IMG/VR virus record: IMGVR_UViG_3300045970_000794 | Location: 62,001 to 126,000 of that record | Reading direction: 5' to 3' (one strand) | DNA: 64,000 nucleotides | Part shown: positions 9,691 through 54,436 of the stretch, piece by piece | How the letters are laid out: the number at the start of each line of letters is the position of its first letter | Position numbering within the stretch: position 1 is the stretch's first letter | Made by a program: the position numbers and the translations under genes | The notes under the pieces: generated by a model | Databases searched by the model: none | What the model was told of the DNA's origin: nothing | What the model saw: only the letters and a program-made list of their open reading frames with translations

Positions 9691-9732
9691 AATTTTAATT
9701 TTTAAGTTAAACAATTTTATTTATAATTTTTG

Positions 9733-9807
9733 AGACTCTAGTTGGATTCGAACCCACGCTGACGGGTTTAGAAGCCGCCGCTTTAGACCAAGCTAAGCTA
9801 TAGAGCC
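9733..9807 (-). tRNA. amber suppressor tRNA (CTA anticodon)
   Basis: GGCTCTA/TAGAGTC, D stem GCTT/AAGC, GCGGC-TTCTAAA-CCCGT, U73. Confidence 0.75.
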
Positions 9808-10141: not shown

Positions 10142-10667
10142 CTACCTGTTTAAAATTTTACCAAAGCGAATTACTTTTTCTATGAATTCTTCCTCTGTAC
10201 CATTATTATCAATGATTACATCAGCACAAGATATGCCAATATTAAATGAATCAGCTGACTCTTGTTCTAATCTTTTAGATGCATCAACCCAAACAATTAA
10301 ATCAAATAACCCTTGTTTCATACATTCTTCAATTTCACCCCTATCTCTCATACCAACATAACAGTCGGCTAATTCAAGAATTCCTTTAGCTAATCTAGCT
10401 CGGTCATCTTTATTATAATCACAAATCACAAATCATATTATACCATTCAGCTCTATGATTTGACCTATCTTCGTAACATTCCTCAGATGTCTTATAATCA
10501 TACTTTTCACTTAATTCATCATAAATGAATATATCAGCAGCTGCTTGTGATGATGAGATAAACTTTAAACCAAAATTATCTCTTAAAATTTCAGCAAACG
10601 TATCTTTACCATGTCTGGCATTTCCAAGGACTAACAGCCTTGGGAACTTACTTTTTCTTGTCTTCAT
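10142..10667 (-). pseudogene. P-loop nucleotide (dNMP-type) kinase split by a 7-bp tandem duplication
   Basis: GNARHGKDT P-loop; ATTTGTG repeated near 10420-10434 separates the 82-aa and 95-aa ORFs, both containing ICD. Confidence 0.75.
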
Positions 10668-11424
10668 AAAAATCTATTTTAAATGTTTTTTTAATTAATT
10701 TATTGTTTTTAATTGCAAATACTATTGAACTTTGAGATACTCCTATGACTCTAGCAGCTTCAGCTCCAGATTCTAAAATAGTAATTTCATTTGTTATAAT
10801 GTTTTTAATCGTAACTTTTTTACTACGTAAACTAATTTGACCAATTTTAAAAGAGTTAGAATTAGATTTAAAATTTTTAGTAAAACGAGCCTCAACTAAC
10901 TCTTTAATATCGGAATTTTTTATTTCATCATGATAAAACCAAGCAATATTTTTAACTGTTTTACAATTACCAAGGCAACATTTTGGAATTACACTTCGAT
11001 GTGTTTTTAATTCTCTAGATGCATCTTCAGCACTATTAAATTCATAAACAATAACACCTTCTTTATTATAACCAATCACACTTTTAGCATTATTACCTTT
11101 CTTGAAACTAGTGTTGTTACCAAATGTACAACCATCACCACCTAATGTATTATTAACTAAATCAAATCCCCATAATTTCATTTGACTAATCCAATATTTT
11201 TCCCAAAAAACCCATTCATCTATCGGTACTACATCAATCACCCATAAAATTGGTTTTAACTCTTCATTTCTTAATGAATTAATCCAATTTCGTTTATGTG
11301 TTTGATGGTCTCTAGCTCTATTCAAATGAGCTTTATATCTTTGTGTTATATTATTCGCTTTACCAACATATCTTACATGACCAGTCCTAGGGTCAATAAG
11401 AACATAAATATTTGTCGTTTCCAT
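10648..11424 (-). CDS. GIY-YIG homing endonuclease with NUMOD1-like repeats
   Basis: NIYVLIDP...YVGKA...E.YWI...L.N; C-terminal AEAARVIGV repeats. Confidence 0.85.
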   Translation of the reverse strand: METTNIYVLIDPRTGHVRYVGKANNITQRYKAHLNRARDHQTHKRNWINSLRNEELKPILWVIDVVPIDEWVFWEKYWISQMKLWGFDLVNNTLGGDGCTFGNNTSFKKGNNAKSVIGYNKEGVIVYEFNSAEDASRELKTHRSVIPKCCLGNCKTVKNIAWFYHDEIKNSDIKELVEARFTKNFKSNSNSFKIGQISLRSKKVTIKNIITNEITILESGAEAARVIGVSQSSIVFAIKNNKLIKKTFKIDFYEDKKK

Positions 11425-11458
11425 ATTAATACATTTCTATATAAATATGGTGAAATCT

Positions 11459-11533
11459 TTAAAAAGTTACAAGCCCATGTCTTCCCGAACCAATGATAAG
11501 TAATTTAGGGAATTGTTTCTTTTCATTAACCAT
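11459..11533 (-). pseudogene. orphan N-terminus of the kinase gene (MVNEKKQFPKLLIIGSGRHG)
   Basis: Manual translation; parallels MKTRKSKFPRLLVLGNARHG downstream of the endonuclease. Confidence 0.75.
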
Positions 11534-11555
11534 TTTAATAATATTTTATTTAATT

Positions 11556-41387: not shown

Positions 41388-42227
41388 TTACAATAACTCA
41401 AATATGTTTCTAATATGATGTCTAAGTTTCCTTATCGCCTTTTCTTTTATTTGACGAACTCGTTCCTTAGTTAACTCATATATATCACCTATAGCCTCTA
41501 AAGTCATAGCTTCAAAGTCTGGATTTAACCCAAAATAAAGTTCAATAATTTCTCTTTCCCTTTGACTTAAATGACTTAACGCATTTGTTAATTCTTTTGT
41601 AATTAAAGAATTGTTGGATTCTAGTTCATCTGGGCTTTTGGCTGAATTATCACACAATAAATCACATAATTCATCACCATCTTCATTTATTTCAATATTT
41701 AACGAAGTGCATGATGGATATGTCATATTGGTGTACTCAACCTGTAAATCAGAACCAACTTCAGATATAATCTCACCATCAACAGGCATTCGGCCATTAT
41801 CCATTTCGAATTTAGCTAATAATTTACGTACTTGTGATAATTTATTAATAATATTGGTTGGTAACCTTATAGTTCTAGAGTTTTCATTTAATCCTTGTAA
41901 AATACATTGTTTAATCCACCATACCGCATATGAAATGAATCTAAAACCACGTGATGGGTCAAACTTCATTGCTGCTTTAATTAAGCCTTCATTACCATCG
42001 TTAATTAAATCAGGTAATTCAACGCCATGTCCTTGATATTCTTTTGCAATTGATACTACAAATAATAGGTTAGCTGAAACTAATTCTTCAATCGCTTTTT
42101 CATCACCTTTTTGAATTCTAAGCGCAATTTCAATTTCTTGTTCTGGGGTTAGTAAGTTGGAGCCGTTAATGTCTTTGAAATACCTATTAATACAGGTATC
42201 TGTTGTGTCAATAAATTTTTTAACCAT
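41388..42227 (-). CDS. RNA polymerase sigma70 factor (RpoD/RpoS group, Bacteroidota-like)
   Basis: ANLLFVVSIAKEY...DLINDGNEGLIKAAMKFD...FISYAVWWI...TKERVRQIKEKA. Confidence 0.95.
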   Translation of the reverse strand: MVKKFIDTTDTCINRYFKDINGSNLLTPEQEIEIALRIQKGDEKAIEELVSANLLFVVSIAKEYQGHGVELPDLINDGNEGLIKAAMKFDPSRGFRFISYAVWWIKQCILQGLNENSRTIRLPTNIINKLSQVRKLLAKFEMDNGRMPVDGEIISEVGSDLQVEYTNMTYPSCTSLNIEINEDGDELCDLLCDNSAKSPDELESNNSLITKELTNALSHLSQREREIIELYFGLNPDFEAMTLEAIGDIYELTKERVRQIKEKAIRKLRHHIRNIFELL

Positions 42228-42318
42228 CTATTCATTTCTTTACGTTTTAAATTATTGTATTCGTTTAAATCTAATAATAAATACGCAAAAGTAAATAGTA
42301 TGTTGCTAGGTTTCTTAA

Positions 42319-42855
42319 TTATTTTTTATAATTAGATACTTTTTTTAATAGTTTTCTATCATAGTCAGTTAAGTTCTCAATACCCTTATCTATGATTTCA
42401 TCAACAATTTTATTACGCTGGTCAATTGATAGATTATCTAAATTAATGGAATTTAAATCACTTTTCTTATTTTTAATGATTTTAGTCTGAGTTGAGCCAC
42501 TGATTACTGGTTCTGGTATTCTACTAATAGAACCATTAATATCAGATAATAATTTACCAGTTAATGTATTCAAACTTTGGAACCCACTAATATCACCAAA
42601 TAAGTGTTCATGAATTGCTTTATTTGTTAGATTAACACCATAATTATCTTGACCCATTTCAAATAATATGAATGACCGATTATTTAATGTGAAAAATTCT
42701 TTCAACTCCAAGGTCGTTGCTATCGTGGAAAATGTTGCAATAACAATCCCTTTAGCATCAACATAACGCACAGCGGTTTCGGATATCTTACCGATTTCAT
42801 CCTTAACACCTTCAACTCGCCCAAGTACTACTAGGCAATAATTTTTAAATTCCAT
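42319..42855 (-). CDS. hypothetical protein
   Basis: 178-aa ORF. Confidence 0.65.
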   Translation of the reverse strand: MEFKNYCLVVLGRVEGVKDEIGKISETAVRYVDAKGIVIATFSTIATTLELKEFFTLNNRSFILFEMGQDNYGVNLTNKAIHEHLFGDISGFQSLNTLTGKLLSDINGSISRIPEPVISGSTQTKIIKNKKSDLNSINLDNLSIDQRNKIVDEIIDKGIENLTDYDRKLLKKVSNYKK

Positions 42856-42906
42856 AATTTAAAATTTAATTTATACAAATATACTTTAACTATTATAAAT
42901 AATCAA

Positions 42907-43567
42907 CTATTTGGTTGAAATTATTGAAATATTATTAGTTTTCTTAATAGTGACAATATTATCTCTTTTTTCATCCCTATTAATTTTACTACATAATGGC
43001 TGTAAATTACTATAATAACTTAATTTTAATATTTCTTCTTCAGTTTTGGCTGAAGATAATGGTATAATGTGGTCAATATCCCAACCATAACCATATTCAC
43101 CATTATATTTACCGTAATTAACCCAATTCATCCATGACTCAAATTTTGATTCTAAATGTAGTTTAAATTCTTCAATAGTACAACCAAGTATTTCAAATGT
43201 TTTTGATTTTTTAATTATATTTCGTTTCTTTAAAATCATTCTATATTTCTTCGCAAATTAGTGGTTAATTTAAATAATGGGTCAACTTCTCTACGTTTTT
43301 TATATCGTTCATTATTTTTACGTTGTTTTACCTCTTTATTCTCTTTAAAATATTCTTTACTATATTCTTTAATTTTCACCTTATTTTCACCTTATTTTCA
43401 ATATAATAAGTTTTTAAATATTCTTTTCGCTTCTCAAATCTTTCTTTTTTTAATCTTTCTTTTTCTTCATCAGTAATTGGAGTCTTTCTAAATTTATCAT
43501 AATATTTTCTAGCTTCTATTTTTCTAGCAGCTTTCTTTTCATCATCAGTAAAATATTTTTTCTTCAT
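42907..43567 (-). pseudogene. HNH endonuclease, frameshifted
   Basis: HLESKFESWMNWVNYG...WDIDHIIP...NLQPLC; broken by an 11-bp tandem duplication near 43373-43394 and a probable 1-nt deletion near 43240. Confidence 0.75.
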
Positions 43568-43628
43568 ATCTTTATTTTATAATAAAAAAATACATATGAA
43601 GAAAAATGTAAAGTCTTTAACAATTTTT

Positions 43629-45986
43629 TTATGACACACTAATAGTTGATATGTTATTAACTTTTTTAATAGTAACAATGTTATTTGACCAATCTTTTAC
43701 TACATCATTGTGTGTTATAAGTATTATAGTATCGTACCAATCTAATATTTTATCGAACAAAGCTTTCATACTATCTAAATTTTCAACAGCTACTGGTCCA
43801 AATATTTCATCAAATTGTAAGAAGTTTGGCTTTGGTAAATATGATACTCGACCAAGTACCGTTCTTAATGCTATTGCTGATGCAAATCGTTCTAAACCAC
43901 TAGCAGATTTTAATTTCTTTTCAATCCCATCAAGAATCATTAGAAATTCAACATCATTCTTATCATTAAGATATAATTCAATATCAAAATTACATACATC
44001 ATCTAATAATCTATGTAATTCAGCATTAATTATTGGTATAACTGAACGAAGTACTAATTTACTAATACCACGCTTACCAACCATATCAATATATATCTTG
44101 AAAATCTTTTCAATTTGGTCTTCCTTTTTAATTTTAACAATAATAGCTTCTTTTTTAGTAATATCGTTAGTATCAGTTTGAATATCGGTTTCGGTTAACT
44201 GAATGCTTTTAATTAAGCCATCACGTTTAAATTCTAATGTTTGAATTTCTGTTTGAACAATAGCTATTTCCATATCCCATTTTTTATTCATTTCAATAGC
44301 ATCATTATTCAAATTATATTGCTTCAATTGGGTTCGTTTACTCTTTATCTTATTTCTTAAACTATCCATTTCAACTAATAATTTATCACGTTCCAATTCC
44401 AGTGAATTACGTTCAGTCACCAATTTCTTTGTATCGGAAAATTCAAGTAATTCTTTTTCAATATTAATTAAACGAAGATTATAAACCTTATTTTTTTCCA
44501 CTAATGAATCAATAGTGCTGTTGTGTTCTAATATTATAGCACTATTATCAACACCTTCCAATGGGCGATTACAAGTAGGACAAATTTCACCATTCTTTAA
44601 ATCTTCAATTAAATTAGTTAATCTATTAATTTCACTATCGTTTTTTGTTTTAGCTATTGATATTGTTTTATCTTCAGTAGTTGTAGCTTGATACAAATCC
44701 TCATCAAATTCAATATCACCTATTTCAGTTAAACGCACTTTAATTAATTCAACACGAGCATTGGCAGCTAAACCTTTAGTAGTATACTCACTAATATCAC
44801 TTTCAATAGTATCTGGATTCGTTTTTAATATTTCATCATCGATGTTATATTTTTTACCGATTAAATCTTCTTTTTTATTAACACTTTTAATAATTTCACC
44901 TTTAACTTCAAGTAACCCATCATTTAAACTAGTTAATAATTCACCATTCGATACAATATCCTCCAAATGCTCAGTAATCTCAGTCTCTAATTGGATGATG
45001 TCATATTGATTAGAAGTCATTTTTTTAGCAAACTCATTATACAATTCCCTAGCTTTACTTTCTTTCATTTCAATAGGTTCTAATCCAATGAACCTAGTTA
45101 ATAACTTACCACGTTCAGTTGGTTTAGTATCAATTAAATCTTCCAAATTTTTAGAATTAGCTGAAATAATAATTTCAAAATCAGCCTCACTACCAATAGT
45201 ATCTTTTATCTTAGCTAACGTTTCACTGGATTCCTCACCCTTCAAATCTTTTTCACTACCATCGGCCATTAATTGATAATATTCAACACTACCTTTAACT
45301 GTATAACTACCTTCTTTTGTTGCTCTCCTAGTAAGCTTACGTTCGATAATAAATTCTTCATCTTCAATATCAATACCACCTCTAACTAATACTTCATCAC
45401 TGTCAGAATATGAATTAAATATTTCTTCATTTCTATCATTTTTACTAGTGGTTCCGAATAATAGATATCTTACCGCTTCCATTGAGAATGTAGTTTTACC
45501 ACCTTGGTTTTTAGGTTCGGATATTACTAGAGTTATTCCCTTTAGTCGACTAAAATATACTGGTTCATTATTACCAAAACATAGGAAATTATTAATTTTT
45601 AACCATTTCAAATTCCATTTACGTTGTCTGGTTGAGAATTCTTCAATTTTAAGTGCTGAATTAACCTTATCATCCAAAGCAATTAACCTATCAAAGTCAA
45701 CTACCTTTTTCTCACGCTCCAACCATTCTTTGAAGAGTTTACGTTGGTAATTAATATCCATTATATTATCAATTCCAGCTTGACACATATCAATAGTGTT
45801 ACCGTTTTCATCAATCTTAAATGGTCTAAATATTACATTAACATTTTTTCTATTAACCCCATATTTTTTACTAAAATGTGAACGAATCCTATTTTTAGCT
45901 TCTCTAGTGTAGTTTTCAGTGGTATCATCCCAGTATACTTTTATTTTAGCATTGGATGGTACATACATTGTATCGTTATTCCCCAT
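43629..45986 (-). CDS. SbcC/Rad50-like (gp46) recombination ATPase
   Basis: NFLCFG...NQGGKTT, CPTC zinc hook, ASGLE signature, QFDEIFG, LITH. Confidence 0.9.
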   Translation of the reverse strand: MGNNDTMYVPSNAKIKVYWDDTTENYTREAKNRIRSHFSKKYGVNRKNVNVIFRPFKIDENGNTIDMCQAGIDNIMDINYQRKLFKEWLEREKKVVDFDRLIALDDKVNSALKIEEFSTRQRKWNLKWLKINNFLCFGNNEPVYFSRLKGITLVISEPKNQGGKTTFSMEAVRYLLFGTTSKNDRNEEIFNSYSDSDEVLVRGGIDIEDEEFIIERKLTRRATKEGSYTVKGSVEYYQLMADGSEKDLKGEESSETLAKIKDTIGSEADFEIIISANSKNLEDLIDTKPTERGKLLTRFIGLEPIEMKESKARELYNEFAKKMTSNQYDIIQLETEITEHLEDIVSNGELLTSLNDGLLEVKGEIIKSVNKKEDLIGKKYNIDDEILKTNPDTIESDISEYTTKGLAANARVELIKVRLTEIGDIEFDEDLYQATTTEDKTISIAKTKNDSEINRLTNLIEDLKNGEICPTCNRPLEGVDNSAIILEHNSTIDSLVEKNKVYNLRLINIEKELLEFSDTKKLVTERNSLELERDKLLVEMDSLRNKIKSKRTQLKQYNLNNDAIEMNKKWDMEIAIVQTEIQTLEFKRDGLIKSIQLTETDIQTDTNDITKKEAIIVKIKKEDQIEKIFKIYIDMVGKRGISKLVLRSVIPIINAELHRLLDDVCNFDIELYLNDKNDVEFLMILDGIEKKLKSASGLERFASAIALRTVLGRVSYLPKPNFLQFDEIFGPVAVENLDSMKALFDKILDWYDTIILITHNDVVKDWSNNIVTIKKVNNISTISVS

Positions 45987-53563: not shown

Positions 53564-54436
53564 TTATATTTTTATTAGTTTATTATAAATACTTTCTTTA
53601 TGTGAAATTCGTAATAATTTTATTTTATTATTAAAACAATAATCTGTTTTAATTTTATCTTTGTTTTGTTGGTCAATTAACCCATTAACCCCACCCCACC
53701 TATCTATTATTTCAAAATGTTGTCTACCATCATATTCAATACATGTATTATATTCTGGAAGATAAAAATCAAATGGTAATGGCTTAATATCTTTACAATC
53801 ATCAAATTTATGTTGTGGAATGAACTTGATATTATTTTTAGTTAAATAATCTCTAATAATTTTTTCACCTTTAGATTCTTTACATTTAGGACACCCACAT
53901 CCTTTTAAATGACTATTGGGTGTCTGTTCAAATTCACCATGAATTGAGCAAATTATTTTTATTTGTTTAAAAACACTAATATAATTAACTAATGAATAAT
54001 CATATTTTTCACCATGAATAGTTTTAGCTTTTTCAATAAATTCATCAGTCGTTTTATATTTACCAACGCATTTAGGGCACCCACATCCTTTTAAATGACT
54101 ATTGGGTATTTGTTCAAATTCACCATGAATTGGGCAAATTATTTTTATTTTAATTTTATTATTTTTATAATTAACTAATGAATAATCATATTTTTCACCA
54201 TGAATAGTTTTAGCTTTTTCAATAAATTCATCGGTTGCAACATAATTACGACTACATTTATAACAATTAATACCTTTCAAATGACTATTTGGTATTTGTT
54301 CAAATTCACCATGAATTGGGCAAATTATTTTTATTTTAATTTTAGAACCGACATAATTGACTAATGAATAATCATATTTTTCACCATGAATAGTTTTAGC
54401 TTTTTCAATAAATTCACCAATAGTTTGTTTTTCCAT
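53564..54436 (-). CDS. homing-type endonuclease: three Zn-finger (DUF723-like) repeats plus PD-(D/E)XK domain
   Basis: Repeat EFIEKAKTIHGEKYDYSLVNY...ICPIHGEFEQ...C..C; PFDFYLP...IEYDGRQH. Confidence 0.85.
   Translation of the reverse strand: MEKQTIGEFIEKAKTIHGEKYDYSLVNYVGSKIKIKIICPIHGEFEQIPNSHLKGINCYKCSRNYVATDEFIEKAKTIHGEKYDYSLVNYKNNKIKIKIICPIHGEFEQIPNSHLKGCGCPKCVGKYKTTDEFIEKAKTIHGEKYDYSLVNYISVFKQIKIICSIHGEFEQTPNSHLKGCGCPKCKESKGEKIIRDYLTKNNIKFIPQHKFDDCKDIKPLPFDFYLPEYNTCIEYDGRQHFEIIDRWGGVNGLIDQQNKDKIKTDYCFNNKIKLLRISHKESIYNKLIKI
53884..54420. repeat. three tandem repeats of about 180 bp inside the endonuclease gene
   Basis: aatgaataatcatatttttcaccatgaatagttttagctttttcaataaattc recurs three times. 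Confidence 0.85.

What the first reader, a model, noticed from the sequence alone, without database searches (positions are those of the whole stretch)
42907..43690. HNH insertion at the 3' end of sbcC with a synonymously recoded duplicate C-terminus
SbcC ends NNIVTIKKVNNISTISVS, and the HNH frame downstream ends DNIVTIKKTNNISIISTK with different codons. The old gene end is stranded beyond the endonuclease and a replacement end completes sbcC. This is the fourth instance in the window (with tRNA-Arg, kinase and TROVE) of insertion accompanied by target duplication, suggesting a general intron-free homing strategy in this phage group.
Basis: partly seen in the sequence, partly recalled or inferred. 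Interest (0 to 1): 0.6.

Follow-up and report, generated by a model that had tools for sequence, protein, structure and literature searches.

The report
Dead homing endonuclease duplicated sbcC's end
A selfish, now broken, HNH endonuclease gene landed in the last codons of a jumbo phage's Rad50/SbcC repair gene, which stayed whole because its 16-codon end is present twice: a layout long known in fungal mitochondria that I found no report of in phages.

Summary
All features are on the minus strand.

- **Two copies of the tail.** The 785-aa SbcC/Rad50-like gene (43629..45986) ends NNIVTIKKVNNISTISVS*. The HNH reading frame 722 bp downstream ends DNIVTIKKTNNISIISTK*. Thirteen of 18 residues are identical, and 6 of those 13 use different codons.
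- **Relatives lack the insert.** The four closest relatives with a readable 3' end, and more distant ones, have one tail. The three with a gene map have about 51 nt and then the next gene, with no HNH.
- **Copy B is the old end.** Copy B, its stop codon and the following 51 nt line up with an HNH-free relative. The last codons and downstream flank of copy A do not.
- **The HNH gene is dead.** It carries an 11-nt tandem duplication and a second frameshift.
- **The layout recurs.** It is seen at two more of the nine HNH paralogues in this 362-kb genome. At the major capsid gene the two copies share 22/22 residues and all 11 base differences are silent. Mirror-image 5' duplications flank two GIY-YIG genes, and 4 or 5 of 76 HNH loci in other phages show flank duplications.

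Best explanation: break repair copied the endonuclease from a diverged phage, with a short-homology right-hand junction. This matches the "gene hybrids" made by mobile endonuclease ORFs in fungal mitochondria. It looks like a recurrent by-product, not an obligate strategy.

The parts
43629..45986 (-). sbcC/rad50-like ATPase gene (785 aa), complete, ending in copy A
   Evidence: ORF. Weak Rad50 zinc-hook hit in Pfam. The C-terminal lobe aligns to Pyrococcus Rad50 with signature motif, Walker B and H-loop. 1213 homologues, most of those listed 745-803 aa; sources name them SbcCD ATPase subunit.
43632..43685 (-). Copy A of the tail (NNIVTIKKVNNISTISVS), the one that completes SbcC. Its last 3 codons and TAA stop (43629..43640) have no counterpart in relatives.
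   Evidence: The 36 nt upstream match relative L020 at 28/36. The last 12 nt match at only 3/12.
43568..43628 (-). 61-nt spacer between the sbcC stop and the HNH start. It contains the leader motif TTATTATAAAATA (43573..43585).
   Evidence: The motif occurs only twice in the 362-kb genome, upstream of this HNH and of its closest paralogue. The spacer is not similar to the ancestral intergenic region (P=0.93).
42964..43567 (-). HNH homing-endonuclease pseudogene, read in three frames: ORFs 43376..43567, 43236..43379 and 42907..43239
   Evidence: Collinear tblastn matches to intact paralogues switch frame near 43380 and near 43240. HNH hit in Pfam at E=6e-4, and phrog_1035 at E=9e-6. Nine paralogues in the genome.
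43378..43399 (-). 11-nt tandem duplication (GAAAATAAGGT x2) that causes the first frameshift in the HNH gene
   Evidence: Reading with one copy left out joins ORF1 and ORF2 into one open frame of 106 aa.
42907..42963 (-). Copy B of the tail (DNIVTIKKTNNISIISTK plus TAG stop): the stranded ancestral end, read in frame as the C-terminal extension of the HNH ORF
   Evidence: Last 3 codons plus stop match HNH-free relative L020 at 10/12. HNH paralogues and family members lack this extension.
42856..42906 (-). Ancestral 51-nt intergenic region between sbcC and the next gene
   Evidence: 23/30 identical to the L020 sequence downstream of sbcC. Relatives have 50-51 nt at this position.
42319..42855 (-). 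Downstream 178-aa gene of unknown function; it is the direct neighbour of sbcC in HNH-free relatives
   Evidence: A homologue follows sbcC directly in L010/L011. 181-183-aa genes occupy this position in the three closest relatives. No Pfam or PHROG hit.

Best explanation
**What it is (shown).** A 722-bp insertion carrying a free-standing HNH (His-Me finger) homing-endonuclease gene sits inside the last about 18 codons of the phage's essential-looking SbcC/Rad50 ATPase gene.
- The gene was not broken, because a 16-codon stretch of its tail is present twice.
- The upstream copy (A), plus three new codons and a new stop, finishes SbcC.
- The downstream copy (B) is still attached to the ancestral stop, the intergenic region and the next gene. 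It is a leftover that the HNH frame now reads through.

**How it probably arose (inferred).**
1. The endonuclease cut an HNH-free sbcC allele roughly 55 nt before its stop codon.
2. The break was repaired from a diverged HNH-carrying phage.
3. The left side used homology within sbcC and copied the donor's tail, spacer and HNH gene.
4. The right side was joined to the cut end through a few shared bases. The HNH gene's own ...KRD/N end overlaps the sbcC ...DN codons.
5. The recipient's own tail was therefore left behind.

The silent differences between the copies would then be ordinary divergence between two phage lineages. They may also protect copy A from cutting and slow deletion between the repeats.

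**Afterwards (shown).** The endonuclease gene decayed, through an 11-nt tandem duplication and a second frameshift.
For: **Structure**
- ORFs and sequence.
- The insertion is absent from the three closest relatives, which keep the order sbcC, 50-51 nt, 181-183-aa gene, sigma factor. It is also absent from more distant relatives.
- Copy B and its flank are orthologous to HNH-free L020, and copy A's upstream flank is too.
- The tail forms the last beta-strands of the Rad50 fold and is conserved in the 120 best homologues listed.

**HNH identity and decay**
-.
- The family's normal C-terminus ends at ...INRDIKRD/N. The junction therefore falls where the HNH end and the sbcC tail share residues.
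- The same in-frame junction at KRN is seen in an unrelated phage, L071: the gene ends ...VKRNFWSSALSNKPT* and the HNH ends ...DIKRNFWKSGLSNKTT*.

**Origin from two lineages**
- The differences between the copies are biased towards silent changes: sbcC 6 silent and 3-5 replacement codons; geneX 6 and 6; major capsid 10 and 0, with 22/22 residues identical. Random mutation would give about 8-11 replacement codons.
- At the capsid locus each copy has its own stop and a different terminator-like hairpin.
- The A-B divergence (about 73-80% identity) is similar to the sbcC divergence from L020 (77%).

**Literature**
- The same architecture is attributed to endonuclease-mediated transfer in Allomyces and Glomus mitochondria (PMC3630166).
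Against: - For sbcC alone, the excess of silent changes is not decisive. If copy A were constrained and copy B drifted after a duplication on the spot, I estimate by hand P of about 0.09 for the observed pattern.
- Copies A and B are equally distant from the only relative with DNA, within the 45-nt core.
- Codon usage makes copy A look slightly more like the gene body than copy B. This fits a long conversion tract, but it also fits copy A being native.
- No donor lineage with an ...ISVS* tail was found among the 120 best homologues.
- No identity breakpoint is visible along SbcC.
- Cleavage, its position and the immunity of copy A are all untested, and this HNH copy is broken.
- Reads from the source sample could not be examined.
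Confidence: 0.65

Rival explanations
1. Duplication on the spot. The HNH gene inserted by two short-homology template switches or a staggered break, which copied one 48-nt stretch of this genome's own sbcC twice. The copies were identical at first and have since diverged: copy A under protein constraint, copy B freely.
For: - The repeat is short and sharply bounded. Copy A's last three codons, stop and spacer are unrelated to the ancestral sequence, as expected if the insert starts right after codon 16.
- Shared residues at the junction here and in L071 fit short-homology switching.
- The HNH gene is old enough to have two frameshifts, which allows time for divergence.
- Both core copies are equally distant from L020.
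Against: - At the capsid locus all 11 differences are silent although copy B is untranslated. By my hand estimate this is essentially impossible under free drift (P about 3e-5).
- Copy B of sbcC has no indel or stop in 18 codons.
- Ser AGT/TCA and similar codon-family switches recur in several pairs, which suggests long divergence under selection.
Confidence: 0.22
2. A dedicated cassette. The mobile unit is [recoded gene end + spacer + endonuclease], and the recoding is selected to restore the gene, resist self-cutting and prevent loss. On this view it is an evolved alternative to introns and inteins, not a repair accident.
For: The layout recurs with two endonuclease families, at both 3' and 5' ends, at five or more loci in this genome and in other phages. 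Duplications have a consistent length of 16-26 codons.
Against: - About 95% of loci of the same HNH family in other phages show no flank duplication.
- The two closest paralogues share the HNH gene and its leader but have different, gene-specific tails. The tail is therefore acquired at each site and not carried along.
- No functional test was possible.
Confidence: 0.1
3. Chance resemblance, an assembly artefact, or an intron or intein.
For: The sequence is AT-rich (30% GC) and of low complexity, and the repeat is short.
Against: - The score lies about 10 SD above shuffles.
- Copy B and its flank are orthologous to a relative.
- The repeats are only about 73-80% identical, so an assembler could neither have collapsed them nor have created them.
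- No Rfam family, including group I and II introns, matches 42200..44200.
- sbcC ends at a stop codon before the HNH gene, so this is not an intein.
Confidence: 0.02

Closest known systems
Gene hybrids made by mobile endonuclease ORFs in fungal mitochondria (Allomyces macrogynus atp6; Glomus sp. atp6, atp9, cox2, nad3; Rhizopus atp9; Mortierella cox2), as described in PMC3630166
   Same: An endonuclease ORF sits near the 3' end of a conserved gene. An inserted C-terminal copy, in phase, completes the gene. The native C-terminal copy is left downstream. The two copies differ more at the DNA level than at the protein level, and the origin is attributed to transfer from another lineage.
   Different: - This is a phage genome, and the endonuclease is an HNH/His-Me finger enzyme of PHROG family phrog_1035.
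- The endonuclease is not in phase with the upstream gene: there is a stop codon and a 61-nt spacer. It is instead fused to the downstream remnant.
- The duplication is only 16 codons.
- The endonuclease gene is already broken.
- Higher identity of the native copy to relatives holds only for its last 12 nt and flank, not for the core.
Free-standing homing endonucleases of T4-like phages and intronless homing (SegF, SegG, MobE; from my own knowledge, and the survey of phage endonuclease genes in PMC10448857)
   Same: A free-standing endonuclease gene lies between or next to conserved, essential genes. It is present in some relatives and absent in others. Frameshifted dead copies are common.
   Different: In the papers I could search, I found no report of those elements duplicating the end of the target gene. 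Here the insertion point lies inside the coding sequence.
Integrase-mediated insertion of prophages and islands into the 3' ends of tRNA/tmRNA genes (from my own knowledge)
   Same: The same logic applies: the inserted DNA supplies a replacement 3' end, so the target gene stays whole, and the displaced old end remains at the far junction.
   Different: No integrase is seen here. The repeats are diverged and not an identical recombination core. The target encodes a protein.
Genes split by endonuclease insertion ("fractured genes" with split inteins, PMC2677866; mobE in Aeromonas phage nrdA, from my own knowledge)
   Same: An endonuclease gene lies inside a coding region without a self-splicing intron.
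   Different: Those genes are cut into two polypeptides or rely on protein splicing. Here the gene stays in one piece through duplication of its end.

Membership tests
Free-standing HNH homing endonuclease gene | HNH/His-Me finger catalytic motif | tested here: met
   Pfam HNH at E=6e-4, 20.3 bits, just under the 21.4-bit cut-off. phrog_1035 at E=9e-6. The family's invariant ...WDIDHIIP...NLQPLCS.INR residues are present. 57-76% identity to the four closest of the eight intact paralogues.
Free-standing HNH homing endonuclease gene | Intact reading frame that includes the N-terminal DNA-binding part | tested here: not met
   Two frameshifts: an 11-nt tandem duplication at 43378..43399 and an indel near 43240. 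This is a decayed copy.
Free-standing HNH homing endonuclease gene | Present in some close relatives and absent in others at the same site | tested here: met
   Absent from the three closest relatives and from more distant ones, in otherwise identical gene order.
Free-standing HNH homing endonuclease gene | Site-specific cleavage of the empty allele, and homing in mixed infection | not testable with these tools
   This needs an enzyme assay or phage crosses.
Gene hybrid made by a mobile endonuclease ORF (Allomyces atp6 type) | Duplicated C-terminal coding segment, with the upstream copy in phase and completing the gene | tested here: met
   SbcC is 785 aa, within the range of most listed relatives (745-803 aa).
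Gene hybrid made by a mobile endonuclease ORF (Allomyces atp6 type) | The native downstream copy is closer to endonuclease-free relatives than the inserted copy | tested here: inconclusive
   Met for the last 12 nt (10/12 against 3/12) and the flank (23/30 against 11/30). The 45-nt core is a tie (about 35/45 against 37/45). Only one relative has DNA available.
Gene hybrid made by a mobile endonuclease ORF (Allomyces atp6 type) | Endonuclease ORF in phase with the upstream gene | tested here: not met
   A stop codon and a 61-nt spacer separate them. Per PMC3630166 this holds in only some of the fungal cases.
SbcC/Rad50 ATPase (the target gene) | Walker A, CxxC zinc hook, signature motif, Walker B and H-loop in the usual order | tested here: met
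   GGKTT, CPTC, SGLER, FLQFDE and ITH can be read in the translation. Weak Rad50_zn_hook hit. The C-terminal lobe aligns to Rad50 structures at E=1.4e-4.
Group I/II intron or intein | Ribozyme structure, or an in-frame protein-splicing domain | tested here: not met
   No Rfam match at E<=1 in 42200..44200. sbcC ends at a stop codon before the HNH gene.

The most novel reading that the evidence does not exclude
In jumbo phages, homing endonucleases of at least two families (HNH and GIY-YIG) routinely invade coding sequence without introns or inteins. They do so by pairing the endonuclease gene with a silently recoded copy of the 3' or 5' end of the target gene. The recoded copy keeps the essential gene whole and makes it immune to cutting. 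In the 5' version it lends the endonuclease the target's own translation start, as in the in-frame fusion of a GIY-YIG gene to the first 25 codons of its neighbour.
Probability: 0.3. Interest if true: 0.7.

Novelty: new member of a known kind. Interest (0 to 1): 0.5.

Why it matters
- **A third route into coding sequence.** It shows that a free-standing phage endonuclease gene can enter a coding region and leave the gene intact without an intron or intein.
- **Fossil junctions.** The leftover junctions record how such insertions form: one homologous side and one short-homology side.
- **Annotation.** Odd C-terminal extensions on endonuclease ORFs, and short orphan ORF fragments next to them, can be remnants of the neighbouring gene.
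- **Locating the cut site.** The remnants mark where the endonuclease probably cuts. The cut site of an uncultivated phage's endonuclease can therefore be tested in vitro.
- **Gene exchange.** The pattern of silent differences gives a handle on exchange between diverged jumbo phages.

Tried and rejected
No reads could be laid, and no HNH-free allele could be sought in the source sample.
I used the intact paralogue as the query instead.
- DNA for the three closest relatives is not held. The metagenome scan gave only one closer but truncated contig (L021). A degenerate DNA pattern for the DW...IVTIKK tail found nothing in IMG/VR.
- The DNA repeat finder missed the sbcC repeat because no exact seed is long enough.
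- The promoter and terminator scan was uninformative in this AT-rich DNA.
- Rfam found nothing.
- Codon usage as a test of which copy is native gave mixed results.
- The identity profile of SbcC against relatives shows no recombination breakpoint.
- The spacer after copy A is not similar to the ancestral intergenic region.
- Pfam TROVE has no match in the genome.
- The duplicate tRNA calls (His, Trp, Asn, Arg) are not simple copies of each other.
Full report
**Setting**

The window is bases 62001-126000 of a 362,102-bp IMG/VR phage record with direct terminal repeats. The genome has 30% GC and uses TAG as an ordinary stop codon. Everything in the finding lies on the minus strand.

**1. The observation**

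The gene order on the minus strand is as follows:

- a 785-aa ORF at 43629..45986;
- a 61-nt spacer;
- three overlapping ORFs at 43376..43567, 43236..43379 and 42907..43239;
- 51 nt of intergenic sequence;
- a 178-aa gene at 42319..42855;
- a sigma-70 gene at 41388..42227.

The 785-aa protein is an SbcC/Rad50-type ATPase:

- It has a weak zinc-hook hit in Pfam.
- Its C-terminal lobe aligns to Pyrococcus Rad50 through the signature motif, Walker B and H-loop.
- It has 1213 homologues, most of those listed 745-803 aa long. Several are named SbcCD ATPase subunit by their sources.

It ends ...DWSNNIVTIKKVNNISTISVS*. The 110-aa ORF ends ...INRDEKRDNIVTIKKTNNISIISTK*.

- Thirteen of the 18 tail residues are identical, and six of those 13 use different codons.
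- The first 15 codons share 36 of 45 bases. Similarity ends sharply on both sides.
- The match scores 62, against 31.3 +/- 3.1 for shuffles.
- The tail is a conserved part of the family and corresponds to the last strands of the Rad50 fold.

**2. What lies between the copies**

The three ORFs are one HNH endonuclease gene read in three frames.

- Intact paralogues match it collinearly, with frame switches near 43380 and near 43240.
- The first switch is caused by an 11-nt tandem duplication, GAAAATAAGGT x2, at 43378..43399. Reading with one copy left out joins the first two ORFs.
- The catalytic part hits Pfam HNH and phrog_1035.
- The genome holds nine paralogues. The other eight have open frames of 200-278 aa.
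- The family is very large: more than 4500 relatives at E<=1e-5.
- Family members normally end 17-25 residues after the NLQPL motif, with the consensus ...INRDIKRD. The window copy runs 33 residues, so the extra stretch is the sbcC-like tail.
- Paralogues carry different N-terminal modules: a zinc ribbon, a helix-turn-helix-like region, or none. This fits different target sites, but is an inference.

**3. Which copy is ancestral**

- The three closest relatives are 82-89% identical in the C-terminal third. Their gene order is sbcC, then 50-51 nt, then a 181-183-aa gene, then the sigma factor, with no HNH.
- More distant relatives with DNA also have one tail followed directly by the homologue of the 178-aa gene.
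- Only one close relative has DNA available: L020, whose sbcC is 77% identical at the DNA level. It gives the following comparison.

| Segment compared with L020 | Copy A | Copy B |
|---|---|---|
| 36 nt upstream of the tail | 28/36 | 13/36 |
| Last three codons plus stop | 3/12 | 10/12 |
| Next 30 nt downstream | 11/30 | 23/30 |
| 45-nt core (approximate) | 37/45 | 35/45 |

- Copy B's stop is 51 nt from the next gene, which is the ancestral spacing.
- Copy B is therefore the old end in its old place, and copy A sits on the gene body.
- The insertion is 722 bp long. Which core copy was imported is not resolved.

**4. The same layout elsewhere**

I scanned every long ORF's end against its downstream DNA, with an opposite-strand control, and ran a self-comparison of all reading frames. 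This found further cases in the same genome.

| Locus | Endonuclease | Duplicated end | Silent / replacement codon differences |
|---|---|---|---|
| geneX, 165 aa, genome 51988..52485 | intact HNH (closest paralogue) | EKFIAHSQYIHKLLEMGLIL* with remnant EKNIEHSKYIHRLIENGLITT*, out of frame | 6 / 6 |
| gp23-type major capsid gene, genome 242072..243859 | HNH plus DUF723-type ORFs, in 2.1 kb | 22 of 22 residues identical | 10 / 0 (all 11 base differences silent) |
| 174-aa gene | GIY-YIG, fused in frame to a copy of the first 25 codons | 5' end of the gene | 8 silent over the first 30 codons |
| kinase-like gene, window 10142..11539 | GIY-YIG | about 24-codon head remnant upstream | 7 silent over the first 30 codons |

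- At the capsid locus, each copy has its own stop and a different hairpin.
- The sbcC HNH and its closest paralogue share a leader motif found nowhere else in the genome, yet their duplicated tails are specific to each target gene. The tail is therefore acquired at each site and not carried along by the element.
- Among 76 loci of this HNH family from other phages, 4-5 exceed the control.
- One of them, L071, copies the sbcC case exactly. The gene ends ...VKRNFWSSALSNKPT*, and the HNH ends ...DIKRNFWKSGLSNKTT*. The junction lies at KRN, which is shared by the gene and by the normal HNH end.

**5. Mechanism**

*Shown:*
- the insertion and the duplication;
- the ancestral position of copy B;
- the decay of the HNH gene;
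- the recurrence of the layout.

*Inferred:*
- The excess of silent differences, absolute at the capsid locus, cannot arise in an untranslated remnant that drifts. The two copies most likely come from two diverged lineages.
- A simple route is break repair. The cut recipient invades a diverged HNH-carrying genome through homology within the gene. It copies the donor's tail and the endonuclease gene, then rejoins the recipient's cut end through a few shared bases at the A-rich end of the HNH gene.
- This predicts a cut site about 50-70 nt before the stop codon at the three 3' loci.
- For sbcC alone a duplication on the spot is not excluded. My hand estimate is P about 0.09 for its pattern of silent differences under that model. 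Codon usage is ambiguous, and no breakpoint is seen in the protein.

**6. Comparison with known systems**

- The architecture matches the gene hybrids made by mobile endonuclease ORFs in fungal mitochondria. The first such case was Allomyces atp6. In Glomus atp6, atp9, cox2 and nad3, an inserted C-terminal copy completes the gene and the native copy remains downstream (PMC3630166).
- Searches for the same thing in phages found nothing. That covers only the open-access library.
- It is not an intron and not an intein.
- I rate it a new member of a known kind. It is of moderate interest because it recurs with two endonuclease families and at both ends of genes.

**7.

- The kinase instance is confirmed.
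- TROVE was not found.
- The tRNA-Arg instance was not confirmed.
- "General strategy" is too strong. The layout is frequent in this genome but seen at only about 5% of family loci elsewhere.

Noticed in passing
G000:C1:239893-243859 (L047:1393-5359), outside the window: The gp23-type major capsid gene has its last 22 codons duplicated 2.1 kb downstream. The copies share 22/22 residues, and all 11 base differences are silent (including CGT/AGG). Between them lie an HNH paralogue and two DUF723-type ORFs on the other strand.
   Followed up: partly
G000:C1:51187-52485 (L049:2187-3485), outside the window: A 165-aa gene (phrog_12204, unknown function) is followed by the closest, intact HNH paralogue. 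After that comes an out-of-frame remnant of the gene's last about 20 codons, which overlaps the HNH stop.
   Followed up: partly
L048:1840-3130 (G000:C1:181840-183130), outside the window: A GIY-YIG endonuclease ORF begins with an in-frame copy of the first 25 codons of the 174-aa gene just downstream, and of part of that gene's leader. This is the mirror image of the sbcC case, and the endonuclease appears to borrow the target's start signals.
   Followed up: partly
window 10142-11539 (-): A GIY-YIG gene (10648..11424) sits between a stranded head remnant (MVNEKKQFPKLLIIGSGRHGLVTF*, 11462..11539) and a kinase-like gene. The kinase-like gene is itself frameshifted by a 7-nt tandem duplication (GATTTGT x2, near 10420-10435).
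   Followed up: partly
window 43378-43399 and about 10420-10435: Both broken genes in these endonuclease loci are broken by short tandem duplications (11 nt and 7 nt). These may be scars of error-prone break repair.
   Followed up: no
L071:2726-3714 (IMGVR_UViG_3300009149_000377): An unrelated phage shows the same layout. The upstream gene's tail, ...KRNFWSSALSNKPT*, is repeated as the in-frame end of an intact HNH gene. The junction lies at KRN, and there are 6 silent and 3 replacement codon differences.
   Followed up: partly
L089, L094, L080: Three other IMG/VR loci of this HNH family also show flank duplications above the control (scores 115, 81 and 71). At least one involves a gene on the opposite strand, and one looks like a duplication of a 5' end.
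   Followed up: no
window 9732-9807 (-): ARAGORN calls a tRNA with anticodon CTA (amber-reading). TAG nevertheless ends 35 of 272 long ORFs, and no sign of a changed genetic code was seen.
   Followed up: partly
window 2359-4020 and 6350-6389: Eight copies of a 40-nt element that resembles a tRNA T-arm and acceptor stem. Several lie outside the tRNAs that ARAGORN called, so they may be tRNA fragments or missed tRNAs next to endonuclease genes.
   Followed up: no
window 53794-54351: Three tandem 186-nt units encode the repeated zinc-finger-like module (reverse-strand reading, C...HG type) that is typical of the DUF723-type endonuclease-like ORFs seen elsewhere in the genome.
   Followed up: no
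whole genome G000: The genome carries many endonuclease genes: 9 HNH paralogues of one family, 9 GIY-YIG matches, and DUF723 repeats at seven places.
   Followed up: partly
   Followed up: partly
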